Assembly: GCA_002269645.1 (NCBI GenBank)
Contig: NIVC01000019.1
Span: 806,001-870,000, forward strand
Length of the DNA stretch: 64,000 nt
DNA from: Macrostomum lignano
Lineage: Eukaryota
Direction of reading: 5' to 3'
Part shown: positions 5,997 through 64,000 of the stretch, in pieces
How positions within the stretch are numbered: position 1 is the first letter of the stretch
Layout of the letters: every line of letters begins with the position of its first letter
The notes under the pieces: model-generated
Seen by the model: only the letters and a program-made list of their open reading frames with translations
Told to the model about the DNA's origin: nothing
Databases searched by the model: none
Position numbers and translations under genes: made by a program

Positions 5997-6361
<365 letters not shown>

Positions 6362-12805: not shown

Positions 12806-13236
12806 GAGACTCACTTTTTGAATCGCAGAGGTTGCTAATAAATTTTGAAGTGTTCAATCTTGCAAAACTCGAATCCGAGAGCTTTGAGAGCTCAGCAGAG
12901 ACCTCACTCGATCTGTTTGAGAACTGTGATTGACGCCTAGAAGCTGCTGCATGCGGCTTTTGTTAGCAGGGCATGGGGGCTGCTGAGAAGCGGACTTATT
13001 AGCTGCCCAATGGGAGGGCTCTGAGAGACGCAGGAGACGGAGTGAGAAGCACATTCATTCTCCGAAGGTTCAGCCGTCACTCAACGCCCTTGCTATTTGT
13101 TTTCATTTTAACATAAACTCATAACCATTTGTCAGCAACTGTCAGTCTTGTACTTGCCTGTGAAAAGGTTTTACAACCTCTGTCATTCGAATCCCAAGGA
13201 GAGCTTCCGATGGCTGAGCTATCAATCTGCCTCTTC

Positions 13237-14481: not shown

Positions 14482-15076
14482 TAAACTTGAATGTTAATGA
14501 CGGTTTCAATATTTTCACGACTTTAATTTTCGTAGGAAGCACTAGATTTCAAACTTTCTCGATCTAAACAAATCCTGTTTACTGTTTTTTTTCGGTCAGG
14601 AAACCCAGCTACTCAACAGAGTCCGCCTTCAGTTAAAGTCCTTTGAATAAAATCCCCCTGACGCCCTCCACTTGACGGAATTCCGGGCAGGAAAATTTAA
14701 ACAAAAACCGACAACCGTGGACGGAATGCTAATGAAGCAAACCAGCTCAGTCAAGTGCGCTGTTCTGAGCCACGTCAAATCTGAAAGATAATCTTCTTCT
14801 AGGTGATAGCTGCATGCAGCACAGTCTTCTTTTATCAGCGAAATGCCAGTCTGACCGTTTTAAAAAGTTTCCCCACACAGGGCGCGAAATCCCCATGCAC
14901 TCGGCTCCTTCATCGATTAGAAAATCGCAGCCTGTCATTCAGAATTAGCTCAGTTTTTCTTCGAAAAAAACAATAATTTACGGAAAGAAAAATTGGCTGC
15001 ATCATACTACTTATCAAGTAGAAGGTGTGAAAATTTTCTAACATTACTTTTCCTAATGAAGTATCCATAAAAACCA

Positions 15077-15558
15077 TGATGTCAGCAGTCTAGCTAGATG
15101 TCAGCCAATGATGTCAGCAGTCCAGCTGGATGTCAGTGAATGATGTCAGCAGTCTAGCTGGATGTCAGTGAATGATGTCAGCAGTCTAGCTGGATGTCAG
15201 TGAATGATGTCAGCAGTCTAGCTGGATGTCAGTGAATGATGTCAGTAGTCCAGCTGGATGTCAGTGAATGATGTCAGCAGTCTAGCTGGATGTCAGTGAA
15301 TGATGTCAGCAGTCCAGCTGGATGTCAGTGAATGATGTCAGCAGTCTAGCTGGATGTCAGTGAATGATGTCAGCAGTCTAGCTGGATGTCAGTGAATGAT
15401 GTCAGCAGTCTAGCTGGATGTCAGTGAATGATGTCAGTAGTCCAGCTGGATGTCAGTGAATGATGTCAGCAGTCCAGCTGGGTTTCAGTGAATGATGTCA
15501 GCAGTCCAGCTGGATGTCAGTGATTGCTGTCAGCAGTCTATCTGGATGTCAGTGAATG
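15077..15558. repeat. Minisatellite, 32-bp unit (left part)
   Basis: Unit GATGTCAGCAGTCTAGCTGGATGTCAGTGAAT. Confidence 0.96.
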
Positions 15559-16514
15559 ATGTACTCCACGGTACCAGGGTGGTGCCTCCGACCATCCTCC
15601 GGCGGCGCATTTTGGAGGCTGCGCATGATGAGGTGCACCCGAGAGCGGAAAATACCAAGGCACATGTGTCTAATGAGTTCTGGTGGCCTGGACTGGATTG
15701 GGATGTCCGTCAGTTCGTTGAGCAGGGTCAGCTGTGCGCTTAAAAACGGCCGGTGATTCAGCGGAAAATTGACATCTGGCCATCCGAGAGCGAGCCGTGG
15801 TCCCGGGTCCAAATGGACCACAGTGAGGTGCCAGGGGTGGGCCTGCTGGTCCAGGTCCCAGACAGGTCTGCGGGCAGTGTGCTGAGAGTGCTGAGGGCGG
15901 TGTTCGCCAGAAATGGAGTGCCACGGACGCTCGCGTCGGATAATGCGCCTGCGAGTTCAGGTTGGAAAGAGTGTCGCAGTGGCTGAACAGCGTCGGCTAC
16001 AAGGAGGTGCACACTCCACCGTACCATCCGGCATCGAACGGGCAGGCTGAGCGGTTGGTGAGGAGCCTGAAAGGCGGGCTGAAGACGTGGACGAAAGTGG
16101 TCCCATTTGACCAGTTCCTGCAAAAACTGCTCCTAACCATTCGCACCAGCAGGCCTAGCGGGAATTCTCATGTGGGGACGCCAGCTGCGCCATCCGCTGA
16201 CGATGACCGAGCAGGTGGGCGACTCCATCTGGCTGAAGGCTCGACCTGGTGCGGCTCCGGTTCCGGCCAAGTTCATCTTGCAGCACGGCCGGAACACAGC
16301 TCTGGTGACCTCAGCTGACCCACCAGACGGAGGACTGCGGATGGCGCATGCAAACCACGGAGGCGGAGGGTGCCAAGGCTGAGTTCTGGAGATGAGACTC
16401 TCAAGCCCCACAGTTCGTATGAGTTGCGGCCTCGCAAACCTGTTTGTTACAATGTTTAAGGACTGGCTTTGGTTTCTTTTGTTTCTCGTGTTTTCTGTTT
16501 GGTTTTCACGTTTC
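15556..16514 (+). mobile_element. Ty3/Gypsy LTR-retrotransposon integrase remnant (frameshifted, partly deleted)
   Basis: Zn-binding region GTRVVPPTILRRRILEAAHDEVHP...FWWPGLDWDVRQFV; core PWSRVQMD...FARNGVPRTLASDN and HTPPYHPASNGQAERLVRSLK, split across frames; pol-like end YELRPRKPVCY. No LTR visible. Confidence 0.88.
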
Positions 16515-17275
16515 ACGTCTAGCTGGATGTCAGTGAATGCTGTCAGCAGTCCAGCTGGATGTCAGTGAATGCTGTCAGCAGTCCAGCTGGATGTCAGTGA
16601 ATTATGTCAGCAGTCTAGCTGGATGTCAGTGAATGCTGTCAGCAGTCTAGCTGGATGTCATTGAATGATGTCAGCAGTCCAACTGGATGTCAGTGAATGC
16701 TGTCAGCAGTCTAGCTGGATGTCATTGAATGATGTCAGCAGTCCAACTGGATGTCAGTGAATGCTGTCAGCAGTCTAGCTGGATGTCATTTAATGATGTC
16801 AGCAGTCTAGCTGGATGTCAGTGAATGATGTCAGCAGTCCAGCTGGATGTCATTGAATGATGTCAGCAGTCTAGCTGGATGTCAGTGAATGATGTCAGCA
16901 GTCCAGCTGGACCTCCAGTCAGTGAATGATGTCAGCAGTCCAGCTGGACCTCCAGTCAGTGAATGATGTCAGCTGTCTAGCTGGATGTCAGTGAATGATG
17001 TCAGCAGTCTAGCTGGATGTCAGTGAATGATGTCAGCAGTCCAGCTGGACCTCCAGTCAGTGAATGATGTCAGCAGTCCAGCTGGACCTCCAGTCAGTGA
17101 ATGATGTCAGCTGTCTAGCTGGATGTCAGTGAATGATGTCAGCAGTCTAGCTGGATGTCAGTGAATGATGTCAGCAGTCTAGCTGGATGTCAGTGAATGA
17201 TGTCAGCAGGCTAGCTGGATGTCAGTGAATGATGTCAGCAGGCTAGTTGGATGTCAGTGAATGATGTCAGCAGTC
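16515..17275. repeat. Minisatellite, 32-bp unit (right part, same orientation as 15077-15558)
   Basis: The same unit resumes directly after the Gypsy fragment. Confidence 0.96.
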
Positions 17276-17939
17276 AAGCAGGATTCCAATCCATAAATTT
17301 TTCACCAAAAATTGTTTTTGTATTTTCGATGTTCCTGTCAGGTGAAAAATGTATTTTAGTGCATCAAAGCAGTTCAATCTCCTTTGAGTAGCGGATCCAC
17401 ATTGTCAATTAATTACTGCAAGGCTTTTCCTGCACAAATCCTTCGCAGATTTACACGTAAGTCACAAAAAGACTGTCACCTCAGCATTTGGATTAAAATT
17501 CTGTCCTTAAGAAGAAGGCTTTGACAGGTTGCTGCATGGCAACTTGCTCGGATTAACGAACTGAGTTTTTTTTCCCGAGCAAAGGGATTTGTTCTGCCCC
17601 GCTCCTCTGGGAAATTATCAGGCACTGGATTGAGAGGCTGTCAGCCTAGTTGCAAGCCTAACAGCCTAACACCTCCGCAAAAGGATTTTTTCAGAATTTT
17701 CAGAATTAGTTAATTACCGAATTCGCACTTGTCAGCAGAGACTGGCCGGATCCCAAATTAATCTCTTCCTCTTTGCCAGGTTTGAGTCGGCAGAGCCTGC
17801 GAAATTATTCAACTGTAGTTTTTCTGACGTCAATTGGTGGTGCATGTTGGCTGTCAGCTGCGGCCGGTTCTGCATCTGGTTTTTTGGCGTCTTGCAGCAC
17901 CACCTCTATCAGACCCAAATAGATCTCTTCACAGACCCC

Positions 17940-29100: not shown

Positions 29101-32100
29101 AATGTCTAACTTGTGTCCGGTTTTCGTACTATCGTCCACTAATTGAATACCACAGTTCCCGCTTTTAATTTTGTTCTTTCGCAAACTCGGTATATGGAAA
29201 TCACATCGATTGTTTTTTTCCACAGACCCGCGCCCTTACCGACCTGGAGCCGTACAGCCACTACCGACTGTTATATTCAGTGTCCAACGGAGCTGCATCT
29301 GGCTCAGCCGGCTCGATTGACTTCAATACTACCGAAGGACGTGAGTGCCATTTTTTGCTTTTGGATTGTTGCCAGCAAAACTCGAGACATTTCAACCACA
29401 CTATTTAGATCTGATCTAGTTATTCCACCCCGAACTTGGGAATCATCCTCACCTTCGGCAGAGAATCGCCCTCGCCTCCCAAAAAGAATCGCCCTCACAT
29501 CCCATAGAGAATCGCCCTCACATCCCAAAAAGAATCGCCCTCACATCCCAAAGAGAATCGCCCTCGCCTCCCAAAGAGAATCGCCCTCACCTTCCGAATA
29601 AAATCGCCCTCACTTCCAAAGAGAATCGCCCTCAACTCCTAAATAAAATCGCTCTCACTTCCAAAGAGAATCGCCCTCACCTTCCGAATAAAATCGCCCT
29701 CACTTCCAAAGAGAATCGCCCTCAACTCCCAAAGAGAATCGCCCTCACCTTCCGAATAAAATCGCCCTCACTTCCAAAGAGAATCGCCCTCAACTCCCAA
29801 ATAAAATCGCTCTCACTTCCAAAGAGAATCGCCCTCACCTTCCGAATAAAATCGCCCTCACTTCCAAAGAGAATAGCCCTCACATCCTAAAGAGAATCGC
29901 CCTCACCTTCCGAAAAAAACCGCCCTCACATCCTAAAGAGAATCGCCCTCACTTCCAAAGAGAATCGCCCTCAACTCCCAAATAAAATCGCCCTCACTTC
30001 CGAAGAGAATCGCCCTCAGCTCCCAAAAAGAATCGCCCTCACATCCCAAAGAGAATCGCCCTCGCCTCCCAAAGAGAATCGCCCTCACCTTCCGAATAAA
30101 ATCGCCCTCACTTCCAAAGAGAATCGCCCTCAACTCCCAAATAAAATCGCCCTCACCTTCCGAATAAAATCGCCCTCACTTCCAAAGAGAATCACCCTCA
30201 ACTCCCAAATAAAATCGCCCTCACCTTCCGAATAAAATCGCCCTCACTTCCAAAGAGAATCGCCCTCACATCCTAAAGAGAATCGCCCTCACTTACCAAA
30301 GAGAATCGCCCTCAACTCCCAAATAAAATCGCCCTCACTTCCAAAGAGAATAGCCCTCACATCCTAAAGAGAATCGCCCTCACCAAAGAGAATCGCCCTC
30401 ACCTCCCAAAGAGAATCGCCCTCACTTACCAAAGAGAATCGCCCTCACCTCCCAAAGAGAATCGCCCTCACCTCCCAAAGAGAATCGCCCTCACATCCCA
30501 AAGAGAATCACCTTCCCCCAAAGAGAATCGCCCTCGCCGCCCCACCCAGAGAGAGACTAAGTCAGAAATAGGCAGAGTCAGCAGCAAGTCCCTCATCTTC
30601 TTACTCCCACAGTCGCGCCTGCGCCCACTCTGCTCCTTTATCAATTGTCGATCTTCGACATGAACCTGACGGCCACTTGCGCGCCAAAAGGCCGCGTCAA
30701 CGGCCGCTTCAACGGCTACAGACTGTTCGTGTACCTGCAGAGCAACAAATCCATAGTGTTCGAGCGCAACTTCGGTCCAGACGCCGTGAACCTGACCGTC
30801 ACCGGGCTGAAGCCGTACACCAGCTACTTGTTGAGTGCGGCCATCGTTACTACAAGGGTCGGAAAGGAATCCTCGCCAACGCCGGTGCTGACAGATCCGG
30901 GCGCCCCGACTGCGCCAATTAATTTCACTGCATCACCGGCCAAGGCTCGCGCCGGCCTGCTACTGTCCTGGGATCATAAACCTGTGGGATTTCGCGACAA
31001 TGCGGATGATAAAAGCTTCCCAATTTACATGCTGACCTACCGGGTCTACTGGCTGTTTGTTATTGATTCCGGCTTAGAACTGCCACCGTCTTATTGGGAT
31101 GTGCCGCTCACATTAGATCAGCTGTCTACCTGTGATTGCAGACTTGCCACTCATGTTAGCTGCCGGCCAACGACTGAGAGAATCTGCGTGAGTCCTTTGA
31201 TAATCATAGATTCCATAATCATAGATTTCATAATCCTAGATTTCATAATCATAGATCTCATAATCCTAGATTTCATAATCCTAGATTTCATAATCCTAGA
31301 TTTCATAATCAAAGATTTCATAATCATAGATCTCATAATCATAGATCTCATAATCATAGATTTCATAATCCTAGATTTCATAATCCTAGATTTTATAATC
31401 ATAGATCTCATAATCATAGATCTCATAATCATAGATCTCATAATCCTGGATTTCATAATCCTAGATTTCATAATCCTAGATTTTATAATCATAGATTTCA
31501 TAATCATAGATCTCATAATCCTAGATTTCATTATCATAGATTTCATAATCATAGATTTCATAATCATAGATTTCATAATCATATATTTCATAATCCTAGA
31601 TTTCATAATCATAGATTTCATAATCATAGATTTAATTATCAAAGATTTCATAATCATAGATTTAATTATCAAAGATTTCATAATCATATATTTCATAATC
31701 CTAGATTTCATAATCCTAGATTTCATAATTGTGATTAAGCCGGCATTAAACTGCCCCCTCTCCCGCCTGCAGCTGCTGCTGCCCCAACGTGAGCTGATCA
31801 GAAGCCTGTCACTCATAACGGACAAAATCGGACAATCGACTGTCGGTCTGTCTGACCAGCTGCGGATCCGCCTGTGGATTCAAGCCGTCGGCAAGTCCAG
31901 CTACGACACTGAGCATCGGCGCTATTTTGGCGACCGATCCGAGCCAGCAGACGCTTCGGTGTCGATCAGCGATTACGAAGCTGGCGGCCTCGGCCGAGCC
32001 TCGAGCAAATTTCCTGGCGGGAGAAGAAAGAATGGCGAATCGGCGACTGACAATAAAGACTCGAATCTGTCGCCCGCCGTTGCTGTCGGCGTCGTTGTCG

Positions 32101-35100
32101 GCGGCATCGCGGCAGTGCTGGGCGTCGGCTTCATCTTGTTGCTTGGCTGGCGCTGGATCTGCGTCCGGCACAGGGGCTACCAGCGGCCGTTTAGCCAGGG
32201 CTTGGAGACTTTCGAGTGCCTCAGTGAGTGCATTGCTCAATTGTAAATGTGCGGGTAGATCAGGGCTCTGCTAATCACTTCCGGTCATTCCATTGATTAT
32301 CTTTGACCTCACACCTCCGGTCATTCCATTGATCATCTTTGACCTCACACTTCCGGTCATTCCATTGATCATCTTTGACCTCACTTCCGGTCATTCCATT
32401 GATCATCTTTGACCTCACTTCCGGTCATTCCATTGATCATCTTTGACCTCACTTCCGGTCATTCCATTGATCATCTTTGACCTCATTTCCGGTCATTCTA
32501 TTAATCATTTTGGACCTCACACTTCCGGCCATTCCATTGATCATCTTTGACCTCACTTCCGGTCATTCTATTGATCATCTTTGACCTCACTTCCGGTCAT
32601 TCCATTGATTATCTTTGACCTCACACTTCTCCATTGATCATCTTTGACCTCACACTTCCGGTCATTCCATTGATCATCTTTGACCTCACTTCCGGTCATT
32701 CCATTGATCATCTTTGACCTCACTTCCGGTCATTAGATTGATTATTACTTCCGGTCGTTGTAATCATAAATTAATAAGTAGGCCTAAATAGGGTTAATAA
32801 ATAGGCCATTTCATTCCCACTTCCTTTCATTGGATGGATCATTATATGACTTGACTTACTTAACTTAGCTGCAGGGGGCTCCAGGCAGTCGGTTACAGCG
32901 GGGAGACGTCGCCGCCCATTCCACTAAGCCCTGGCGACCACAGGCAACCTGGAAAAATCGGACAGATCCGGGTTTGGGTCGAGTAGGCGAGTCTGTCCCC
33001 AGTAAGGTTCTCAACACTGGAGAGGCAGAATGGGCGCATTCCTCTACGAGGTTTTTACCTGGACGGCTCTGCAGTTGAGTCCAAGCAGGGCCCTGTGGAG
33101 GGCAGCTCGGAGATTGTCGGCAATTTCTGATCATCATATTTTTCATTATCCGATTTCTCCAACGTTTTGGTTATAATTTTGCTCGTGATGTGTTCCTTAC
33201 TACCAACCCAGTAATCAAATGAAGGTATTTATTACCTTGAGAACTGATCAGTTTATCTCTTCCTTAGCGTTGTTCTCGCTAATAGACCTTCGAAGTCTTG
33301 TATATCGGGCGCCCCTCGTCGGTGTCTGGTCCGGTCCTCTTTGTCCTCAATGACTTCTTGCCGGCCGGTATCTGTAGGTCGGACCACTGGAAGCTTCCAA
33401 TTACAATGGGTACCCTGCGCCAACTGCGGTTCAATATAAGCCTCCTTCTAGCAGTGCCTCTATGCACTCTAGGTATGGCTCCGGTATTCTCTAGCAGATC
33501 TTCTAAGATCTACTAGGGTAGTCCTTCGGGCGACTACAGCCAATGGAGTCTCAAATGGACTCAAATGTCTCAACAGACTCTAACACTATATCACAAGTGA
33601 GTCGACTCAACAACAACGGGCGTAAATAAAGAAGGCTTACCGCAAGTCACTCGACCGAGTCTCGAGTTGATCTAGGAAGTCTTGGCTAAAGCTTCCTCTT
33701 CGGAGCTCCTTCTCCTTCCGGAGACCGGTTTCTTAGCTCCGGGTCCGCTTCGGACCACTTGTATTTATAGACGATTTCGTAGGCCAAAAATAGTAACATG
33801 ACTCATGTGCTAAAATAGCAACGTGATTCATCGGCTATAAATAGTAACGTGATTCATCTGCTAAAAATAGTAACATGAATCATCCTTAAAGTTTAGGTGC
33901 GCATGCGTGCACTTACTTACTTATAGTAGCATTCTACAATTGTCAATTTACTTTTGCGGGAGGTAAAACACTCTACACTCGTGTCTACTTTAAGTAGCAA
34001 GATTCGCTTTTCGAATCTTTTTAACAGCCGCAGACAACGATCAAGGCGGCCACAGCAGTCACAGCGCCGGCAGTTCTCGTGCGCAGTTGAAGCGCTACTC
34101 TCAGACAGAGCACAAGGCCATGTCCGTTGCTGAATTCCGCGATCACGTGATCGCCAGCCACGCCAACGATAATTCCGCTTTTCAACTCGAATTTGAAGAC
34201 ATTCAACGTGTGACGCACAAGGATTGGCCGGCGTATCATGCCAAGCATCCTGATAATCTGTCTAAGAACCGCTACACGGACATCTGTCCTTGTGAGTATT
34301 GGCTTTAGTTGTGTCTATGGAGTGAAGTGCTGTTACATTTGTGTCTATGGAGTGAAGTGCTGTTACATTTGTGTCTATGGAGTGAAGTGCTGTTACATTT
34401 GTGTCTATGGAGTGAAGTGCTGTTACATTTGTGTCTATGGAGTGAAGTGCTGTTGCATTGGTGTCTATGGAGTGAAGTGCTGTTACATTTGTGTCTATGG
34501 AGTGAAGTGCTGTTACATTTGTGTCTATGGAGTGAAGTGCTGTTACATTTGTGTCTATGGAGTGAAGTGCTGTTACATTTGTGTCTATGGAGTGAAGTGC
34601 TGTTACATTTGTGTCTATGGAGTGAAGTGCTGTTACATTTGTGTCTATGGAGTGAAGTGCTGTTGCATTGGTGTCTATGGAGTGAAGTGCTGTTACATTT
34701 GTGTCTATGGAGTGAAGTGCTGTTACATTTGTGTCTATGGAGTGAAGTGCTGTTGCATTGGTGTCTATGGAGTGAAGTGCTGTTACATTTGTGTCTATGG
34801 AGTGAAGTGCTGTTACATTTGTGTCTATGGAGTGAAGTACTGTTACATTTGTGTCTATGGAGTGAAGTACTGTTACATTTGTGTCTATCGAGTGAAGTGC
34901 TGTTGCATTGGTGTCTATGGAGTGAAGTGCTGTTACATTTGTGTCTCTGGAGTGAAGTGCTGTTACATTTGTGTCTCTGGAGTGAAGTGCTGTTGCACTG
35001 GTGTTTATGGAGTGAAGTGCTGTTACGTGTCTATGGAGTGAAGTGCTGTTACATTTGTGTCTATAGAGTGAAGTGCTGTTACATTTGTGTCTATGGAGTG

Positions 35101-36326
35101 AAGTGCTGTTACATTTGTGTCTCTGGAGTGAAGTGCTGTTACATTTGTGTCTCTGGAGTGAAGTGCTGTTACATTTGTGTCTATGGAGTGAAGTGCTGTT
35201 ACATTTGTGTCTATGGAGTGAAGTGCTGTTACATTTGTGTCTATGGAGTGAAGTACTGTTACATTTGTGTCTATCGAGTGAAGTGCTGTTGCATTGGTGT
35301 CTATGGAGTGAAGTGCTGTTACATTTGTGTCTCTGGAGTGAAGTGCTGTTACATTTGTGTCTCTGGAGTGAAGTGCTGTTGCACTGGTGTCTATGGAGTG
35401 AAGTGCTGTTACGTGTCTATGGAGTGAAGTGCTGTTACATTTGTGTCTATAGAGTGAAGTGCTGTTACATTTGTGTCTATGGAGTGAAGTGCTGTTACAT
35501 TTGTGTCTCTGGAGTGAAGTGCTGTTACATTTGTGTCTCTGGAGTGAAGTGCTGTTACATTTGTGTCTCTGGAGTGAAGTGCTGTTGCATTTGTGTCTCT
35601 GGAGTGAAGTGCTGTTACATTTGAGTCTATGGAGTGAAGTGCTGTTACATTTGTGTCTCTGGAGTGAAGTGCTGTTACATTTTGTGTCTCTGGAGTGAAA
35701 TGCTGTTGCATTTGTGTCTCTGGAGTGAAGTGCTGTTACATTTGTGTCTCTGGAGTGAAGTGCTGTTACATTTGTGTCTCTGGAGTGAAATGCTGTTGCA
35801 TTTGTGTCTCTGGAGTGAAGTGCTGTTACATTTGTGTCTCTGGAGTGAAGTGCTGTGTCTATGAGTGAAGTGCTGTTGCATTGGTGTCAAACATGTCAAT
35901 CGCCTCCCTAACACACGCCTATAAATCAATCAACTCAGACGATCACAGTCGAGTTGTTCTGCTGTCAAACCCAGGCAAGAAAATGGGCGACTACATCAAT
36001 GCTAACTATGTTGATGTGAGTAATCACTTGCTATTCTTATTTGTCACAATTCTTTCTTACTCAGTTTTCTAAGTGCAAGCCCTACCCGAATCCAGGGCTA
36101 CCGCCGGGACAAAGCTTACATCGCTTGCCAGGGTCCTGTGCCGTCCACCTTTGACGACTTCTGGCTAATGGTGTGGGAGAACCGCTGCACGGCTGTCGTT
36201 ATGATCTCCAACTTTGTGGAGCGGGGGAGGGTGAGTCACTGCTTTATGATTCGGGCACTGAGTAGATGGATAGATAGTTGGGTAGATGGATAGATAGTTG
36301 GGTAGATAGATAGATAGGTAGATAGG

Positions 36327-36377
<51 letters not shown>

Positions 36378-36402
36378 GTAGATAGATAGATAGGTAGGTA
36401 GG

Positions 36403-36473
<71 letters not shown>

Positions 36474-36527
36474 GTAGATAGATAGGTAGGTAGGTAGATA
36501 GATAGATAAATAGGTAGATAGATAGAT

Positions 36528-36574
<47 letters not shown>

Positions 36575-36609
36575 TAGATAGATAGGTAGATAGGTAGATT
36601 GATATATAT

Positions 36610-36685
<76 letters not shown>

Positions 36686-36694
36686 GTAGATAGG

Positions 36695-36739
<45 letters not shown>

Positions 36740-36766
36740 CGATAGATAGATAGATAGATAGATAGG

Positions 36767-36805
<39 letters not shown>

Positions 36806-39800
36806 GTAGATAGATACATAGGTAGACAGATTGATAGGTACTTATTTGGAAGATAGGTAGACACTGGGGAAGATATATTCTGAATAGATTGTAAGCAGTA
36901 GTCAGGAATTCAACGCCAGACTTCCCTCGGCACTCCGCAGCGCAAATGCGACCAGTATTGGCCCTCCAGCGGCAGCGAAGTGTACGGCGCCATCTCGGTG
37001 AAGCTGATCCGTCAGCTCAATAAGGCGGCCTACTGTATGCGCGAATTTTCTATCAGAAATTTGCGCGCAAAAAAGCTGGCGAAAGAGCGCCAATTGTTCC
37101 ATTTTCACTATTCTGAGTGGCCAGACTACGGCGTGCCGGCTTATCCGCTGCCCGTGCTCAACTTTGTACAGCGGACGGCCGCCTACTGCGGGGGCGACCA
37201 GTCCGGCCCGGTCGTGGTGCACTGCAGGTAAGCTCTTGTAATTATAGTTTAGAAGTTATTAACGGCGAAATAGCTTGAATTTTACCAGAAGCGTCTAAAT
37301 TATTACCGGAAAGAGCTAAATTATTATCTAAAACGGCTGGATTTTAACCGTAAGTGGCTGGATTCTAACCTGAAGTAGCTGGATTCTAACCGGAAGTAGC
37401 TGGATTCTTACCTGAAGTAGCTGGATTCTAACCTGAAGTAGCTGGATTCTAACCGGAAGTAGCTGGATTTTAGCTGAAAGGAGCTGGATTTTAGCTGAAA
37501 GGAGCTGGATTTTAGCTGAAAGGAGCTGGATTTTAGCTGAAAGGAGCTGGATTTTAGCTGAAAGGAGCTGGATTTTAGCTGAAAGGAGCTGGATTTTAGC
37601 TGAAAGGAGCTGGATTTTAACCGTAAGTGGCTGGATTCTAACCTGAAGTAGCTGGATTCTAACCTGAAGTAGCTGGATTCTAACCGGAAGTAGCTGGATT
37701 CTAACCTGAAGTAGCTGGATTCTAACCGGAAGTAGCTGGATTTTAGCTGAAAGGAGCTGGATTTTAACCGTAAGTGGCTGGATTTTAACCGTAAGTGGCT
37801 GGATTCTAACCTGAAGTAGCTGGATTCTAACCGGAAGTAGCTGGATTCTAACCTGAAGTAGCTGGATTCTAACCTGAAGTAGCTGGATTCTAACCGGAAG
37901 TAGCTGGATTTTAGCTGAAAGGAGCTGGATTTTAACTGGAAGTAGCTGAATTTAAACAAGGGGCTGAACTTTAACCGGAAAGGACTTAATTTTAGCCGGA
38001 AGTGGCTGGATTTTAGCCTCAAATGGTGGATTTTAACCGGAAGGAGCTGAATTTTATCCGAAAGTGGCTGGATTTCCTTACTAATTTAGTATCGATATAA
38101 ACATAAATCGAGTCTGAAGCCAATTCTCACACAATTATTTTCATTTTGTTACTTTGCCTACCCTCAGCGCCGGGGTTGGCCGCACTGGCACCTTCATCTG
38201 CATCGAGTCGCAGATTCGCCAAATCCTATGCGAGAAAACCATTAACGTGCGCGGCTTCCTTGAGCACATCCGGCAGCAGCGAATGCGCCTGGTGCAAACC
38301 GAGGAGCAGTACATCTTCATTCACGACGTACTGCTGGAGTTCCTGCTCTGTCCTGAACGGGAGATCCCCATGGAACGGTTGCCGGATTATTTTAGCAACC
38401 TGATGGAGGAGACTGAGCCGTGCGGCTGCACGGGATTGGAGACTCAATACCAGGTGCGAGACTGAAGCCTAGGAAATGTTTTTATTGATAGTAGTTTAAA
38501 CAGTAATCCCGTTAAAAACGGTACCGTGACAGAGTCGCTAAAAAGTCATTGCAAACAACTCACTAGTGACTCTAGCGACTCTTGTGAGTTTTTAAACGAC
38601 TCAAACGACTGCAATGTGACGGAGAGGCGACTGTTGAGTCACGATCAGTAAGTTGTAAAATTGTGAAAGAGTCATCCAAGACTCTATTTTGTTGGCGCTA
38701 AAATTTCGCTTGAGATGTGTCTCTGAGCACGTTTCAAATCCGACTCTACAGCCTTAGAGTCGCTATGCGTTCAAATTGTCTTTTAGGCAACTCTTTGACG
38801 GCTTTTTGGCGACTTGTACCGTGACATTTCGTTGTTTTAGAGTCGTCTGGGGTCACTTCTTGTCTATTTTACCTGTGTTTTACCTGCAATGACTCGGGGG
38901 CGACACAGGTGACTCCAGGTACACTTGTTGGCCTGGCACCGTACCGTTTTCATCGGGAATCTCAACAATAACTTGTATAAATACACTGAGGATCCTAAAT
39001 CAGCCTCGACAAAATTTTGCATCATCAAAATCGTGGCATTCTGTTAGTGAAAATTAATTTAAAACATCTTTGCAAAAACTTTGCAGCTTTGCGTTGCGCA
39101 TCAACCGGCTGATTACGAGTTGGCGTCGGCGCTGAAGGCGTGCAACTATGCCAAGAACCGGGCGGATGTGTATCCCAGTAAGTGGGGGGGGGGGCGTAGC
39201 CCAGTGGCGCTCTGGTGTGCCAGCGGCCCAGGCTCGATTCCAAGTGTAGTCGCATTAATTTTGTGGCTAAATTGGAATCTCGGCTTGGCTCTGCTCGTGC
39301 AATTAACGCCATTGAGGGCCAACCACCATGACACAGTGAAGTGTACATCTCAGGTTTTTTTGTGTCATAAGCATGCCATGACATGTCTAAATTAAAAATG
39401 GCATAACGATTTTTTGCCATTATGCCATTGCCAAATTTGCCAATGCTGATGATTCCCCAATTCCAAATTTCAGTTTTGCTTTTAATTTTTTTTTCAAATA
39501 TTACCTTGTTTGTCGTGACAGTTGCATGACTTGCAACTTGCACTTTACGATCAACGGCAAGTTGCATTTCATCATTCTACATTTTATGCAAATGGCATGT
39601 CGAAATTGAAAATGGCATAACGATTTTGACGAAAAAATCCTGGCACTGTACATGCCTTAAGATAAATAAAGTTAGGGCTGATGTACACTTCTGTGTGACT
39701 GCTCAGGGAAGTCGGCGGAATGGGCAGCAATGCCTCTTACAGTTTAGTCCTTGGCTTATAAGCTCACACTGCACCGGACCAGTCTAACCTGTCTATCCAT

Positions 39801-47933: not shown

Positions 47934-49996
<2,063 letters not shown>

Positions 49997-52983: not shown

Positions 52984-53594
52984 CACCCAGCAACGGTCAA
53001 AACCGCCACCCCACCGAGAGAGGCGACCTCTCTCTCACCTCAACTGCAAGCGACGCAACTTGCGCCACGGCGTGGCTAAAGCTGGGTGAGAGTGAATGCA
53101 GGAGAGGGCAATCAGGGGATGCACTTTACTTTAGCAGATTAGCAGTCAGCTCACCCCACATTAGACGGAGCAGGGTGGCTGGCGCGGTCGGAGTTCGCCT
53201 GACAATCCGCAGCAGATGTCGATTTGCCCTGGCTGTTGAGCCGCGGAGATCATGGCGCTGGCTGCCTGTGGCTGCGTGCTGAACACTACCAGTCTCTTGG
53301 GACTTCGTTAACAGCGCTCGAATTGTTGAACGTGATCGGCCAAATTGGCGAGCAACTGCGCTGATGGATGCACCAGCTTCTAGCATGCCAACAGCTCGCC
53401 ATCGTTCAGCGTCTGTCATATGCCTGACCATTGTCACGTGTACAGTGAATTGAATGTTGCACCCCCAACCCCAACCCCAGTCCCTCTCACCCAGCTCTTT
53501 AGCCACGCCGTGGCGCAAGTTACGTCACTTGCAGTTGAGGTGAGAGAGAAGTCGCCTCTCTTGGTAGGGTGGCGGTTTTGACTGTTGCTGAGTG
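52984..53594 (-). mobile_element. Tc1/mariner internal-deletion derivative retaining the transposase N-terminal HTH
   Basis: ~110-bp TIRs (52984-53092, 53484-53594) starting CACCCAGCAAC / CACTCAGCAAC, flanked by TA on both sides; ORF from ATG 53431: MVRHMTDAERWRAVGMLEAGASISAVARQFGRSRSTIRALLTKSQETGSV, a paired-like Tc1 HTH; no DDE domain. Confidence 0.9.
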
Positions 53595-54424: not shown

Positions 54425-60113
<5,689 letters not shown>

Positions 60114-62652
60114 GCCGAATAGCTGGGGGTCACCAGCTGGGCTGTTGCGTCAGGGTGGCGGGGACTGCTGGGGGAGGGCACTATTGCTGGCTAGATGAGT
60201 TCAAGCCACTCTGAAGAGTGAGCAGAAATTCAAGGCAAAGTTCAATTTATGATGTAAATCTCCATACCCCACCTATCATATTAGACATTTTTCTAAAAAT
60301 AAAAAAGTATCCATAAGTAGCTTATTCACTGCTAGATCCAATATAATTTTGCAGCATAACATAGTCAAAATATCTAATAAATAATTGAATATTTTAGCAC
60401 AAGGAAACTGTGGCTTAAAAATAAAATTTAAATAAGTTTTATAATTAGAAAAGCCAATAAAATTATTACAATGTACACTTACATAAAAACTTGTCAAATA
60501 AACTTATCATTAAAGCTGGAGTGAGTTTAGCGTATGAAATAGCCATAGCTTTGTAGGCATAATTTACTATGACTGAATATTAATAAATAATAATACAGAA
60601 AATTAAATAAATCTTTTTAAAGATAAATTAGATAAATTATATTCTTAGTATTTTAAGTTTCTAAGACTATCTAAAAAAGCTATAAAACAGTTGGCAACAT
60701 TTTTATCTTACCAATTCCAAACAAAGAAGAATAGTATAACATTGAATAGCTCAGCAATTGATGTGTTCTTATTCTATTTATCTGGAATATTTATCTGAAC
60801 AATAATCTGTTTCTGTTACAGTCAATAGGCCACACCCTCTGCATAGGAATAACAACTTAAAACTTATATCTTATGTGTTGGCATCCATCTAGGAGGAGAT
60901 ATTCGTTAAACCCGGCCGGTCCACTCAGCTTTAGATATATGATTATATTTCCGAACTAAGAGAGATGAATAAATAGCTATGTTATTTACCATAAAGTCCA
61001 TAATAAGTGCGGAGATGCATATTATTCGCAAAGAGACTTTTAATCCTAAAAATTGGGTAAAAATATTTAAACTTTCAACAAGACACGTGTAGCCCCGTTG
61101 TAATAGTTCAGGTTGTTAAAAGATCGGCTAAGCTTGAGCATTAATAGCTAAGTAGTTCGATCGATCATATTTTAAACAATCATAACCTTTACGTTTGAAC
61201 TTGTGGTACCACTCTTTGAGTTTAGTTAAACACAGTTTGCAACCTGAATCCTTATTAGCTTGAAAATATAAACGTAGTTACTAAGACTTGAATCTGCAAC
61301 TATTTTTTGCAGTTGTGCTTTATATTGTATTTTATTTGTATAGGCTTGGTTGGTTCTTATCAACGTGTACATGGTGCAATACATGTATGATACTTTCTGT
61401 GGGCAAGCGACAAAAATAATTTTCGTCTAAAGTAGACAATCAATTATATTGATAATTTCATGGTAGTTCGTATCATGCAGTTAAAACGAATGGGATTGGG
61501 ATGAAATATTACATGTACCATACAAATACAAATGATTTACATTTACATGTACGAAATCAGACCACGCGGCACACGCGTTTTAGCATACAAGGTAGCATAC
61601 AGTACATGATGTGCACAAGTACAACAGTAGGTACAAACTCAAAGACTCAAAGGAACTGTTAAGTAGGCCACTTTCGTGGAAAAAATACACTGTGGAGATG
61701 GGAAAAAATCTTTTTTTTTCATCATAAATCAATGTGATTGCATTCGATCTGGAGCAGTGCAAAGATTACCATTTCTTAATTTAGCATCCACAACATGTTA
61801 CTCTATTGTATTTTATATAGCTTTGAAAATGAACTTTTCATTTTCATATCGTTTTCTTTTTATTTCATATACACGTAAGCCCTAATGTTCAAATGTTGAA
61901 AAGTTGCAAATGTTCACAAGTGAAGTTTTGTCTTGTCTTTCTTGAATCCACTATATTTGTAGTAAAATTGTTGCACCCAGGTACTCTTAAGCCACTATTG
62001 TAGGTATAGTTTCATCGAAATGCAAATTTGTAGCTACATGTACTCCTATACCGGCTGTCATATTGATAATAGTGCAGACAAAAATGTTTAGCAATATCAT
62101 TTGACTTTTTTCATGTTGTTGATCTTAGTCTTTAGAAAGCTATATCAATTTTTAAGCCAACAAGCTTTAGCTTAAGACTATATAAGATCGAGTACCTACA
62201 TACATTCCAAAATTTTATTACAATTAATATAATATACATGTACTTGATTAAAAAAAGAACAAGAAAATGCCACATTCGTGCAGTACATGTAAAACTAGTT
62301 ATACAAGCGTACATCTCCTTAAATTAAGGCGGAAGAAAATTCAGTACGCGTAAGAAGAGCGTCAACATTTAAAATACAATTTGTTGCGTTATCTAAACGG
62401 AGTTTACAAACGTTCTTATAATAGGGGTTTTACCATAGACAAATGCGATCGAAAAAAGTGGTCCACAAGAAAACACTCAAGAGATGGGGACAGCTGAAAG
62501 TTGCTGTGTGCCACCAGTGCTGCGGTAAAGTCTGACTCACGGTGGGCAGCTATACTGCAATGTACAGATTGTGTACACAGCACACTATACTCTACATGCA
62601 TATGTGTAAAGCGCGCGAGAACCCAACAGGTGCAGCGCTGCAGTGTTCAGCC

Positions 62653-62659
62653 TATAAAA
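62653..62659 (+). promoter_or_regulatory. Candidate TATA box of the PhnZ-like gene
   Basis: TATAAAA ~75 bp upstream of ATG 62732; a second TATAAA lies near 62697. Confidence 0.3.
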
Positions 62660-62731
62660 TATGGGACGGAATTGCTAGCGTTATATATTCCTAGCTTATA
62701 AATTGACAAAACACAATCAAACTGCCTCATC

Positions 62732-63391
62732 ATGCAAGCAACCTCGACAATAGACAAGCTGGGCTACCAGCTGCCGCCTCGACCGATTCCAGCTGCTCAG
62801 ATGAGTCTTCAAGCCCGCGTTGACGAGGTGTTCGACCTGCTGGAGAGGCACGGCAGCGAGAACTACCTCGGCGAGGACATCTCCAAGTGCCAGCACGCAG
62901 TGCAGTGCGCCCTCATTGCCGAAGGTCTCAACCAGCCGAGCCACATCGTCCTTGGCGCCCTGCTGCACGACATCGGGCATCACCTGAGCGGCTTGGATCC
63001 CCAGGTGCCACGCATGGTTACCGACGGCGTTGACTATGGCACGGTGGATCACGACATTGTGGGAGCTCGCTACCTGGAGTTGCTGCAGTTCCCGCCGGAA
63101 ATTACCGCCTTCGTGCTGAATCATGTTCAGGCGAAGCGTTACCTGGTTGCTAAGCGGCCCGGATATCGGGAGCAGCTGTCGGAGGCGAGCAAGGCCACAC
63201 TGGAGCACCAAGGAGGCGCCATGAGCAGCGCGGAGGCCGACCAGTTCGAGAGCCTTCCAGATCACGGCGCCTATCTGGAGATGCGCACCTGGGATGAGGC
63301 TGGCAAGGACCCGAGCGTGGACTACACAGTCGAGCTAGGACGGCTCAAACAGCTCTGCATGGATTACCTGGCTTCCAAGTCTCCAGCTTGA
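62732..63391 (+). CDS. phnZ: PhnZ/TmpB-like HD-domain diiron oxygenase (phosphonate C-P cleavage family), intronless, 219 aa
   Basis: NYLGEDISKCQHAVQCA, ALLHDIGH, DHDIVGARYL, NHVQAKRYL, YREQLSEASKATLEHQGG, MRTWDEAGKDP give the full motif series of the phosphonate-degradation HD family. Alternative start at 62801. AATAAA at 63452-63457. The symbol is a family-level assignment. Confidence 0.9.
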   Translation: MQATSTIDKLGYQLPPRPIPAAQMSLQARVDEVFDLLERHGSENYLGEDISKCQHAVQCALIAEGLNQPSHIVLGALLHDIGHHLSGLDPQVPRMVTDGVDYGTVDHDIVGARYLELLQFPPEITAFVLNHVQAKRYLVAKRPGYREQLSEASKATLEHQGGAMSSAEADQFESLPDHGAYLEMRTWDEAGKDPSVDYTVELGRLKQLCMDYLASKSPA

Positions 63392-64000
63392 TAGGGAAAT
63401 ATGGAGGCACCGCGTTGGTTTAACTTGTTTTTTGTGCAACGTGTTCGAGTCAATAAATATATAATATAGCTTACTCTAACAGCTAGAGTTTCGGTATTCA
63501 AACTGTATGAAGAGTTTATTGGGTGGTGATCAGTCACTCCCACTTCTAGACACTGGGGAACAAGTGCCTAGGTATATTGTATATTGAGGAATGGCAATAG
63601 AATGTTTCAATAGATGGAATGGCAGCGAAGATTCTGCACTGCGTTGCGCGTGTATTTATATGATTATAACAAACAGTGCGAGATTGAGGGGCCAAGGGAG
63701 GTGCGAAAAGGTGGCGTGGCGTGATTGGCTACGCCAACCCCCCGGCTTAGCAAGCCGGCTAGCTTGGCGCGCACCCACCCCACCTCAGCTAGACAGAGGC
63801 GGGGGGGGGGGGTTTCCAGTACGGCTGCACTGGTGCTGCCGGTCGCGTAGTCTGGCCGCCACAATATACAAGTCGAATAACTTACTGCGGCGGATCCTCT
63901 AGTGGTTTGTAGACGTCTGGTTCTTGTAGTGTGCAGCGCTGTCTGGCTTGGCTGAGCTGGGTTTCTTGGAGTCCTTAACTTTATCTGTGGGTCGACCAAA

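What the first reader, a model, noticed from the sequence alone, without database searches (positions are those of the whole stretch)
62732..63391. Intronless PhnZ/TmpB-like C-P bond-cleaving oxygenase in an animal genome
Seen: a complete single-exon ORF with all expected diiron ligands (QH, HD, DH, NH, WD), the N-terminal YxGE motif and the phosphonate-pocket series HDIGH, AKRYL, SxxSxxTL, RxWD. It has host-like GC, a TATA candidate and a downstream AATAAA, and is contiguous with spliced animal genes, whose orthologous families are all intron-containing here. Known: PhnZ (with PhnY*) and TmpB (with TmpA) oxidatively cleave 1-hydroxy-phosphonates to release phosphate, are characterised mainly in marine bacteria and some fungi, and aminoethylphosphonate lipids and glycans are abundant in marine invertebrates. 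Inference: the animal may catabolise phosphonates itself using a horizontally acquired or anciently retained enzyme. The required 2OG/Fe hydroxylase partner is not in this window. PhnZ-like annotations may already exist in other invertebrates, so novelty must be checked.
Basis: partly seen in the sequence, partly recalled or inferred. Interest (0 to 1): 0.75.

Follow-up and report, generated by a model that had tools for sequence, protein, structure and literature searches.

The report
Flatworm copy of animal PhnZ-like oxygenase
The ORF is a real, conserved gene of the marine flatworm Macrostomum lignano for a PhnZ/TmpB-type iron enzyme that probably cleaves carbon-phosphorus bonds. It belongs to an old, already annotated family found across marine invertebrates and was not recently acquired from bacteria.

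Summary
Observation confirmed. It matches PhnZ (E 7e-32) and TmpB (E 5e-28). Its AlphaFold model (pLDDT 94.6) superposes on substrate-bound PhnZ (TM 0.92).

The window is Macrostomum lignano contig NIVC01000019.1. A second copy lies on another contig beside the same LIM-domain gene, so contamination is excluded.

Horizontal transfer into this animal is not supported:
- The best hits are all animal proteins, from sponge, cnidarians, echinoderms, hemichordates, amphioxus, a brachiopod, molluscs and crustaceans. RefSeq already names many of them "2-amino-1-hydroxyethylphosphonate dioxygenase-like".
- The flatworm protein carries a three-residue insertion found in 33 of 36 named animal sequences and 2 of 180 others.
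- Two intron positions and phases are shared by a shrimp, a scallop and an octocoral. The gene is therefore old in animals, and the flatworm lost its introns.

dN/dS against a related species is 0.07, so the gene is under purifying selection.

No partner hydroxylase lies nearby. The closest bacterial relatives, in Bacteroidota nutrient-uptake loci, also lack one. I found no paper on an animal PhnZ, so activity and substrate remain untested. It is a new member of a known kind, of modest interest.

The parts
62732..63391 (+). Single-exon CDS (219 aa plus stop) of the M. lignano PhnZ/TmpB-like HD-domain diiron oxygenase (transcript cluster Mlig025485)
62732..62803 (+). N-terminal extension (aa 1-24) that other animal and bacterial homologues lack but the 85%-identical relative keeps. 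Its function is unknown. M24 is the position where other animal proteins start.
   Evidence: alignment; model pLDDT 55 for aa 1-10 and 91 for aa 11-20
62864..62875 (+). Codons Y45-L-G-E48: the YxxE substrate-gating loop shared by PhnZ (Y24/E27) and TmpB (Y30/E33)
   Evidence: PMC8177086
62894..62896 (+). H55, first iron ligand (PhnZ H34)
62966..62980 (+). H79-D80-I-G-H83: the HD iron ligands (PhnZ H58/D59) and the conserved second-sphere His (PhnZ H62). An extra His84 follows that only the two Macrostomum sequences have.
63017..63025 (+). V96-T97-D98: three-residue insertion after 'RM' that marks the animal clade
   Evidence: present in 33/36 named animal sequences, 12/12 unnamed clan members and 2/180 others
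63050..63052 (+). H107, iron ligand (PhnZ H80)
63122..63124 (+). H131, iron ligand (PhnZ H104). It is followed by A134-K-R-Y-L138.
63293..63295 (+). D188, last iron ligand (PhnZ D161), within R185-T-W-D188
62653..62659 (+). TATAAAA, 79 nt upstream of the ATG: candidate core promoter. A second TATAAAT lies at 62697-62703.
   Evidence: identical in the second genomic copy. Function is inferred.
63452..63457 (+). AATAAA, 61 nt after the stop codon: candidate polyadenylation signal
   Evidence: conserved in the second copy, and homology between the copies ends about 50 nt further on
54425..60113 (-). Upstream neighbour: spliced LIM-domain gene (444 aa). It is not part of the enzyme, but it anchors the locus in the animal genome and is also present beside the second copy.

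Best explanation
This is a functional nuclear gene of the marine flatworm Macrostomum lignano. [quoted passage not shown] It is the flatworm orthologue of an old, vertically inherited animal clade that is widespread in marine invertebrates, and it lost the ancestral introns in the Macrostomum lineage. The inferred mechanism is as follows. Six residues (H55, H79, D80, H107, H131, D188) hold an Fe(II)/Fe(III) pair. In the resting enzyme Y45 caps the second iron. A 1-hydroxy-2-aminoalkylphosphonate binds the first iron, most likely (R)-2-amino-1-hydroxyethylphosphonate derived from phosphonolipid or phosphonoglycan head groups of diet or self. Binding swings E48 onto the amine and releases Y45. 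O2 then binds, and the C-P bond is cleaved oxidatively to phosphate plus glycine, or to a betaine if the amine is methylated. Shown here: gene integrity, genomic integration, family and fold membership, conservation of all catalytic residues, purifying selection and membership of the animal clade. Inferred: expression, catalytic activity, substrate identity and the source of the 1-hydroxyl group.
For: Family and fold:
- Pfam HD, TIGR03276 at 1.9e-48, PDB PhnZ at 7e-32 and TmpB at 5e-28.
- All ligands and the YxxE loop are conserved. The motif definitions are taken from PMC8177086.
- The AlphaFold2 model has pLDDT 94.6. The only strong Foldseek matches are PhnZ (TM 0.92, rmsd 2.1 A) and TmpB.

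A real animal gene:
- The contig is NIVC01000019.1 of the Macrostomum lignano assembly.
- A second copy (PAA75916.1, BOX15_Mlig025485g3) lies on NIVC01000856.1 beside the same LIM neighbour. The two loci are 91-94% identical over about 15 kb and the proteins differ at 7 residues.
- GC3 and codon usage resemble those of neighbouring exons.
- The GenBank annotation of this assembly was built from RNA-seq transcripts (PMC5730564). The annotated paralogues therefore imply transcription.

Selection: dN/dS is 0.073 (dS about 1.5) against an 85%-identical orthologue in SRR28338165.

Animal clade:
- The top hits are all Metazoa, at 177-188 bits against 156 or less for others.
- A profile search finds Porifera, Cnidaria, Echinodermata, Hemichordata, Cephalochordata, Brachiopoda, Mollusca and Arthropoda.
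- The signature insertion is shared.
- A metazoan HMM scores 245.5 bits against 220.2 for a bacterial HMM.
- In the NJ point estimate, Macrostomum sits in an all-metazoan clan of 44 sequences.

Vertical descent: a phase-0 intron before 'IVLG' and a phase-1 intron in 'YY[ED]|xLS' are shared by Palaemon, Pecten and Paramuricea.
Against: - NJ bootstrap support for the placement is weak: 9% for the exact clan and 21% for the relaxed criterion. No ML tree could be run.
- The protein scores below the curated NCBIfam cut-offs for every characterised subfamily: 164 against 214.6, 135 against 300 and 102 against 300. Substrate specificity therefore cannot be assigned by homology.
- No PhnY*-type hydroxylase is detectable in the window, the next 10 kb, the paralogous locus or four other animal loci.
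- No animal member has been assayed in any paper I could find.
- I did not inspect expression data directly.
- Three cnidarian or cephalochordate sequences lack the signature insertion, and the sponge and jellyfish sequences fall outside the main clan in the NJ tree. Monophyly of all animal copies is therefore not proven.
Confidence: 0.72

Rival explanations
1. The gene was acquired recently by horizontal transfer from a marine bacterium into the Macrostomum lineage. That would explain why it has no introns.
For: The gene is intronless, whereas M. lignano genes average 4.9 introns. The family is overwhelmingly bacterial: 4454 hits at E <= 1e-20, mostly from metagenomes. Tree support is weak.
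Against: The best hits are animal proteins (E 6.6e-50 for the best animal hit against 1.1e-38 for the best non-animal hit). The animal-specific insertion is shared. The metazoan HMM scores 25 bits above the bacterial HMM. Codon usage is host-like. Homologues in other phyla have shared intron positions.
Confidence: 0.05
2. The gene is a processed retrogene. An mRNA of the ancestral intron-containing animal gene was reverse-transcribed and re-inserted in a macrostomid ancestor, and the parental copy was then lost. The alternative is stepwise intron loss in place.
For: All ancestral introns are absent at once. The 85%-identical relative also has an uninterrupted CDS. Retrotransposons make up 21% of this genome.
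Against: There is no poly(A) tract after the AATAAA and there are no flanking target-site duplications. The event would be old (dS about 1.5 to the relative), so such marks would have decayed. No parental copy is known. The contig of the relative may be a transcript, in which case it says nothing about introns there.
Confidence: 0.35
3. The sequence is bacterial contamination or an assembly chimera and is not part of the animal genome.
For: A prokaryote-type enzyme on a single exon would fit a contaminant.
Against: It lies inside a 1.57-Mb contig between animal genes. A collinear duplicate lies on a second, 395-kb contig with the same neighbours. The flanks are AT-rich, repeat-rich flatworm DNA. 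The protein carries the animal-clade insertion.
Confidence: 0.01
4. The protein keeps the PhnZ fold but acts in animals on something other than a phosphonate, or as a phosphohydrolase like most HD proteins. Alternatively it acts on ready-made 1-hydroxy-phosphonates and needs no dedicated 2-oxoglutarate hydroxylase partner.
For: It scores below all equivalog cut-offs. No partner lies in cis. The nearest bacterial relatives examined sit in three Bacteroidota loci. Two of these are SusC/SusD loci with a phosphodiesterase or phosphoesterase, DUF5690 and an FAD oxidase. None has a PhyH- or TauD-type gene within 6 kb. Canonical PhnZ-like and TmpB-like genes do have such a neighbour.
Against: The six-ligand diiron motif, the YxxE loop and the residues aligned to the PhnZ phosphonate pocket (K135, S153, T156, Q160, R185) are invariant or nearly so across the animal and bacterial sequences. 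Assignment of those pocket residues rests on my recollection of the PhnZ structure papers, which the library does not hold. Animal genes are rarely clustered, so the lack of a partner in cis is weak evidence.
Confidence: 0.2

Closest known systems
PhnZ, (R)-2-amino-1-hydroxyethylphosphonate dioxygenase (glycine-forming), from uncultured bacterium HF130_AEPn_1 (PDB 4MLM, 4MLN, 4N6W, 4N71)
   Same: Same HD-domain fold (TM 0.92, rmsd 2.1 A to the substrate-bound form). Same H...HD...H...H...D diiron ligands, the YxxE loop and the conserved AKRYL, SxxSxxTL and RxWD motifs. About 34% identity over 171 residues.
   Different: It is eukaryotic and monocistronic, with no adjacent PhyH-type PhnY*. It has a 24-residue N-terminal extension, an extra His after HDIGH and the animal-clade VTD insertion in the loop between the HD motif and the next His ligand. 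It scores below the TIGR03276 cut-off. Its activity is untested.
TmpB, (R)-1-hydroxy-2-trimethylaminoethylphosphonate oxygenase, from Leisingera caerulea (PDB 6NPA)
   Same: Same fold and ligands, and about 36% identity. It is the top Foldseek hit by E-value.
   Different: The TM-score is lower than for PhnZ (0.80-0.85). The NF049941 score is 135 against a cut-off of 300. No GBBH/TauD-type TmpA was seen nearby, but that type was not searched for by sequence.
Animal proteins that RefSeq names '2-amino-1-hydroxyethylphosphonate dioxygenase (glycine-forming)-like' (for example Palaemon, Pecten, Saccoglossus, Asterias, Branchiostoma, Lingula, Sycon)
   Same: 45-52% identity to the bilaterian and cnidarian members (38% to the sponge Sycon). 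It shares the clade-specific insertion, has the same length class once the extension is removed, and keeps all catalytic residues. This is the clade it belongs to.
   Different: Those genes have 2-4 introns, two of them at conserved positions, whereas the flatworm gene has none. The flatworm branch is long. Only Macrostomum has the N-terminal extension and the extra His.
PhoF, the fused PhnY*-PhnZ enzyme of the fungus Fonsecaea multimorphosa
   Same: It is the one eukaryotic member with demonstrated phosphonate-degrading activity (review PMC10574752).
   Different: PhoF fuses the hydroxylase and HD domains. The flatworm protein is a stand-alone HD domain.
myo-Inositol oxygenase (MIOX), the classical animal HD-domain diiron oxygenase
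   Same: Same cofactor type and the same four-electron oxidative bond-cleavage logic (PMC8177086).
   Different: The structural match is only distant (TM 0.42-0.48, E about 0.7). According to the review, MIOX has no YxxE loop and cleaves a C-C bond rather than a C-P bond.

Membership tests
[quoted passage not shown] | HD-domain all-helical fold close to PhnZ and TmpB | tested here: met
   Pfam HD 1.5e-6. AF2 model pLDDT 94.6. Foldseek finds PhnZ at TM 0.92 and TmpB at 0.80-0.85, with every other HD protein at E >= 0.01.
[quoted passage not shown] | Six-residue diiron motif H...HD...H...H...D | tested here: met
   H55, H79-D80, H107, H131 and D188 align to PhnZ H34, H58-D59, H80, H104 and D161. 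They are invariant in 70 sequences. The motif definition is from PMC8177086.
[quoted passage not shown] | YxxE substrate-gating loop | tested here: met
   Y45-L-G-E48 aligns to PhnZ Y24/E27 and is nearly invariant. The loop is described in PMC8177086.
[quoted passage not shown] | Score above the curated cut-off of a characterised subfamily model (TIGR03276, TmpB NF049941, PhnZ1 NF052439) | tested here: not met
   164.3 against 214.6, 135 against 300 and 102.1 against 300 bits. This means the substrate-specific subfamily is unassigned. It does not exclude the protein from the superfamily.
[quoted passage not shown] | Cognate Fe/2-oxoglutarate hydroxylase (PhnY* of the PhyH type, or TmpA of the GBBH/TauD type) encoded alongside | tested here: not met
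   tblastn with a PhnY* from locus L011 gives only chance hits in the window, L001 (10 kb further), the paralogous locus L007 and four animal loci. No such domain appears among the called neighbours. The TmpA type was not searched for by sequence, and the rest of the genome could not be searched.
[quoted passage not shown] | O2-dependent C-P cleavage of a 1-hydroxyalkylphosphonate with an Fe(II)/Fe(III) cofactor | not testable with these tools
   This needs the recombinant enzyme, EPR or Moessbauer spectroscopy and 31P-NMR assays.
Metazoan PhnZ-like clade (RefSeq '...dioxygenase (glycine-forming)-like') | Closest relatives are animal proteins | tested here: met
   Hits 3-13 are animal proteins at 158-188 bits, and the first non-animal hit scores 151. 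The metazoan HMM scores 245.5 against 220.2 bits for the bacterial HMM. The NJ point estimate places it in an all-animal clan, but bootstrap support is only 9-21%.
Metazoan PhnZ-like clade (RefSeq '...dioxygenase (glycine-forming)-like') | Three-residue insertion after 'RM' in the loop between HDxGH and the next His ligand | tested here: met
   V96-T97-D98 is present. The insertion occurs in 33/36 named animal sequences, 12/12 unnamed clan members and 2/180 others.
Metazoan PhnZ-like clade (RefSeq '...dioxygenase (glycine-forming)-like') | Conserved introns (phase 0 before IVLG; phase 1 in YY[ED]|xLS) | tested here: not met
   Both are present in Palaemon, Pecten and Paramuricea and absent from both M. 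lignano copies. I read this as secondary loss.
Horizontally transferred (alien) gene in an animal | Better match to non-metazoan than to metazoan proteins, and nested within a donor clade | tested here: not met
   Best metazoan E is 6.6e-50 against 1.1e-38 for the best non-metazoan. See also the signature insertion and HMM test.
Processed retrogene | Intronless copy of an intron-containing parent, with a poly(A) remnant and target-site duplications | tested here: inconclusive
   The gene is intronless (met). No poly(A) tract or flanking direct repeats were found. The age of the event (dS about 1.5) would have erased them. A parental copy could not be searched for.

The most novel reading that the evidence does not exclude
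Marine invertebrates, including this transgenesis-capable flatworm, carry an ancient animal-encoded oxidative C-P bond-cleaving enzyme. It would let the animals themselves, rather than only their microbes, recycle phosphonate head groups from diet or from their own lipids and glycans. Like its closest Bacteroidota relatives, it may work without a dedicated PhnY*/TmpA-type hydroxylase. The substrate could instead be a naturally 1-hydroxylated phosphonate or the product of a different kind of hydroxylating or oxidising enzyme. No animal PhnZ has been assayed in any paper I could find.
Probability: 0.4. Interest if true: 0.55.

Novelty: new member of a known kind. Interest (0 to 1): 0.33.

Why it matters
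Phosphonates such as 2-aminoethylphosphonate are abundant in marine invertebrates. [quoted passage not shown] This gene is a well-conserved, selectively maintained animal candidate for that breakdown. M. lignano also has an established transgenesis method (PMC5730564). If the enzyme is active, the animal side of phosphonate turnover becomes directly testable. As a genome observation, however, it is an ordinary orthologue of an already annotated invertebrate gene family. It is not a case of gene transfer.

Tried and rejected
- **Tree:** I built an NJ tree with 100 bootstraps on 229 sequences and 184 columns. The topology favours the animal clan, but support is too low to stand alone. I therefore relied on the insertion signature, the intron positions and the HMM comparison.
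- **Spacing regex:** a regular-expression measure of spacing between the His motifs was badly designed and I discarded it. The alignment-column count replaced it.
- **Saccoglossus exons:** exact splice mapping failed because the assembly does not reproduce the protein. Only approximate exon limits from tblastn are available.
- **Papers not held:** the primary structure papers for PhnZ and TmpB and the PhoF paper are not in the library. Assignments of substrate-pocket residues beyond the ligands and the YxxE loop rest on my own recollection. I did not use them to choose between AEP-type and TMAEP-type substrates.
- **TmpA query:** a TmpA-type query could not be obtained, because the one locus with a GBBH/TauD neighbour has no DNA on hand.
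- **Whole-window domain scan:** I prepared an exhaustive Pfam scan of all window ORFs but did not run it, as it was too bulky for its value.
- **UTR comparison:** the UTRs of the related-species contig show no similarity to the window flanks. Whether that contig is a transcript or genomic DNA cannot be told.
- **Retroposition marks:** I searched for a poly(A) tract and target-site duplications and found none.
- **Searches not used:** I left the third large protein search unused. A bacterial PhnY* query would return only bacterial top hits and would not answer whether animals have a partner.
Full report

Yes. Window 62732-63391 (+) is an uninterrupted ATG-to-TGA ORF of 219 codons. Its product matches:
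- Pfam HD (1.5e-6);
- the NCBIfam "phosphonate degradation HD-domain oxygenase" model TIGR03276 (1.9e-48), the TmpB model (2.4e-39) and the PhnZ1 model (2.7e-29);
- the solved structures of PhnZ (E 7e-32) and TmpB (E 5e-28).

In the HMMER alignments, the flatworm residues match PhnZ as follows:

| M. lignano | PhnZ |
|---|---|
| Y45 | Y24 |
| E48 | E27 |
| H55 | H34 |
| H79/D80 | H58/D59 |
| H83 | H62 |
| H107 | H80 |
| H131 | H104 |
| D188 | D161 |

A published review defines the family by the motif H...HD...H...H...D plus a YxxE gating loop (PMC8177086). Both are complete here. These positions are invariant or nearly invariant in a 70-sequence alignment of animal and bacterial homologues.

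An AlphaFold2 model built on that alignment has mean pLDDT 94.6 and pTM 0.91. Its only strong PDB matches are PhnZ (TM 0.92, rmsd 2.1 A to the substrate-bound form 4MLN) and TmpB (TM 0.80-0.85). All other HD proteins, MIOX included, are far behind.

**2. Where does the window come from, and is the gene really in that genome?**

The exact protein is encoded on contig NIVC01000019.1 (1.57 Mb) of assembly GCA_002269645.1. NIVC00000000 is the Mlig_3_7 assembly of the marine free-living flatworm Macrostomum lignano (PMC5730564). Two further GenBank proteins in the same 90% cluster are labelled Macrostomum lignano: PAA75916.1 (BOX15_Mlig025485g3) and the partial PAA58187.1.

The window holds animal genes: a LIM-domain gene, a rhodopsin-type GPCR, a fibronectin-III protein and an EF-hand protein. 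It also holds the dense minisatellites typical of this genome.

The second full copy lies on NIVC01000856.1. It has the same spliced LIM gene upstream at the same distance and an ankyrin-repeat gene downstream. The two loci are collinear and 91-94% identical over about 15 kb. The coding sequences differ at 16 nucleotides and 7 residues. This fits the known chromosome duplication of the sequenced DV1 line.

The CDS has GC3 0.74, within the 0.65-0.87 range of neighbouring exons. Its codon preferences correlate with theirs (r = 0.79). Contamination and chimerism can be dismissed.

**3. Is it functional?**

- A Logan contig from run SRR28338165 encodes an 85%-identical protein with the same N-terminal extension and the same extra histidine. 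It presumably comes from a related macrostomid.
- Nei-Gojobori analysis of the 219 aligned codons gives dN 0.110 and dS about 1.5, so dN/dS is 0.07. This is strong purifying selection over a long divergence.
- Both M. lignano copies keep the TATAAAA at -79 and the AATAAA 61 nt after the stop.
- The GenBank annotation of this assembly was derived solely from RNA-seq-based transcript assemblies. The existence of annotated Mlig025485 gene models therefore implies transcription. I did not see expression data directly.

**4. Transferred or inherited?**

After the two Macrostomum sequences, the best single-sequence hits are all animal proteins at 44-52% identity (alignment A1) and 158-188 bits. They come from Palaemon, Pinctada, Pecten, Lottia, Saccoglossus, Paramuricea, Glandiceps, Pollicipes and Patella. 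The first non-animal hit scores 151 bits.

A profile of the animal sequences recovers many more animals:
- penaeid and caridean shrimps, krill, a porcelain crab, a horseshoe crab;
- many bivalves and gastropods, and Lingula;
- six echinoderms and Branchiostoma;
- the cnidarians Rhopilema and Exaiptasia;
- the sponge Sycon.

Unnamed members of the same clan turned out to be the copepod Neocalanus, Penaeus vannamei and a jellyfish. RefSeq already names most of them [quoted passage not shown]. No vertebrate, insect or nematode appears among the listed top hits. That is an observation on a truncated list and does not prove absence.

Three independent lines place the flatworm gene with the animals:
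- **Signature insertion.** A three-residue insertion (V96-T97-D98, consensus RM-[VI]-T-[DN]-G) lies in the loop between the HD motif and the next His ligand. It is present in 33 of 36 named animal sequences, all 12 unnamed clan members and only 2 of 180 other sequences. One of those two pairs with the sponge.
- **HMM comparison.** An HMM built from 32 animal sequences, without Macrostomum, scores the flatworm protein at 245.5 bits. An HMM built from 168 other sequences scores it at 220.2.
- **NJ tree.** The point estimate joins Macrostomum to a 44-member clan that is entirely animal.

Bootstrap support for that placement is weak (9-21%), as expected for about 180 columns and a long branch. I therefore do not rest the case on the tree.

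**5. Introns**

The animal genes are spliced. Gene spans are 22 kb in Palaemon, 2.7 kb in Pecten, 4 kb in Saccoglossus and 5.6 kb in Paramuricea, each for proteins of about 195 aa.

Exact splice mapping shows two introns shared by a crustacean, a mollusc and an octocoral:

| Intron | Phase | Palaemon | Pecten | Paramuricea |
|---|---|---|---|---|
| Immediately before 'IVLG' | 0 | after aa 51 | after aa 48 | after aa 52 |
| Inside 'YY[ED]\|xLS' | 1 | after aa 126 | after aa 123 | after aa 127 |

The gene was therefore already split in the cnidarian-bilaterian ancestor. It has been inherited vertically since then. M. lignano lacks both introns, whereas its genes average 4.9.

I found no poly(A) remnant or target-site duplication. 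Old retroposition and stepwise intron loss cannot be told apart with the data at hand. Whether the whole animal clade stems from a very early transfer from bacteria or from an older eukaryotic gene also remains open.

**6. How it most likely works**

By homology, the protein binds a mixed-valent Fe(II)/Fe(III) pair through the six ligands. Y45 caps the second iron until substrate binds the first. E48 then engages the substrate amine, O2 binds the freed site, and the C-P bond of a 1-hydroxy-2-aminoalkylphosphonate is cleaved to phosphate plus glycine or a betaine. This mechanism is the one described for PhnZ and TmpB (PMC8177086 and PMC10574752).

The YxxE loop is common to both enzymes, so it does not tell which amine is preferred. 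The protein falls below the curated cut-offs of all three characterised subfamilies. The substrate is therefore inferred, not assigned.

**7. The missing partner**

A PhyH-type PhnY*, taken from a canonical bacterial phnY*-phnZ pair (L011), finds nothing in any of these:
- the window;
- the 10 kb beyond it;
- the paralogous locus;
- the four other animal loci.

Animal genes need not be clustered, so this is weak evidence.

The closest bacterial relatives I examined also lack such a partner. They lie in three Bacteroidota loci. One sits next to PhoD. The other two are SusC/SusD loci with the gene order phosphodiesterase or phosphoesterase, HD, DUF5690, FAD-dependent DAO. None has a PhyH or TauD gene within 6 kb. 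The PhnZ-like and TmpB-like examples do have one adjacent.

The subfamily nearest the animal clade may therefore receive its 1-hydroxy substrate by another route. This lead rests on three loci only.

**8. What is known, and verdict**

I found no paper in the library that describes or assays an animal PhnZ. The only eukaryotic enzyme mentioned is the fungal fusion PhoF. [quoted passage not shown]

The gene is thus a new, somewhat derived member of a known and already annotated family. Its derived features are the lack of introns, the N-terminal extension and one extra histidine. It is not a horizontal acquisition.

Its interest is modest. It lies mainly in giving a tractable model animal in which to test whether animals cleave C-P bonds themselves.

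Noticed in passing
window 11075-12806 and 13238-14481: Two long arrays of the same 31-nt minisatellite lie in opposite orientation: 55 copies, then 40 copies whose consensus is the exact reverse complement of the first. They are about 430 bp apart and form a large inverted repeat of tandem arrays, which also explains the strong, opposite GC skews there.
   Followed up: no
window 15076-15562 and 16517-17284, flanking ORFs at 15758-16516: Two arrays of one 32-nt unit, in the same orientation, bracket about 1 kb containing ORFs that look by eye like a retroelement integrase fragment ('HTPPYHPASNGQAERL...'). Pfam gave no hit for the 118-aa ORF tested.
   Followed up: partly
whole window (42 Tandem Repeats Finder rows scoring 400 or more): The window is extremely dense in mini- and microsatellites, for example (GTCT)n at 5999-6362, (TCTG)n at 48963-49726 and (TAGA)n at 36263-36837. 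Several run straight on from coding exons, so mechanical ORFs read through them. The EF-hand exon at 48664 reads into (TCTG)n, and the FN3-gene ORF at 30645-32246 spans a 15-nt array.
   Followed up: no
L009 3307-8977; L012 4898-9040 (also L010, L013, L014): A recurrent Bacteroidota nutrient-uptake locus has the order SusC, SusD, phosphodiesterase or phosphoesterase, PhnZ-like HD, DUF5690, FAD-dependent DAO, with no 2-oxoglutarate hydroxylase. It looks like an uncharacterised phosphonate or phosphonolipid head-group utilisation system. It contains the bacterial PhnZ relatives closest to the animal clade.
   Followed up: partly
L004 10001-12711 and 15890-17658; L003 20691-22339 versus 30481-32048: Pecten maximus has two tandem, intact PhnZ-like genes. 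The Palaemon gene span contains a second, degraded copy of exons 3-5 (77-94% identity with frame changes) inside a long intron.
   Followed up: no
L001 versus L007 (window 54425-64000 and beyond): The whole locus (LIM gene, PhnZ-like gene, downstream repeats) exists twice in the assembly at 91-94% identity, with different minisatellite copy numbers. A third, truncated copy (PAA58187.1, 125 aa) sits on a 27-kb contig.
   Followed up: partly
window 53126-53518 (-): A 130-aa ORF has helix-turn-helix domains of the Tc3/paired-box type (HTH_23 1.7e-8; HTH_Tnp_Tc3_1 5e-4). It is probably a Tc1/mariner-like transposase remnant.
   Followed up: partly
window 62732-62803 and 62981-62983: The two Macrostomum sequences share features seen in no other homologue examined: a conserved 24-residue N-terminal extension (MQ..GYQLPxRxIPxAQM) and an extra His (H84) directly after the conserved HDIGH.
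   Followed up: partly
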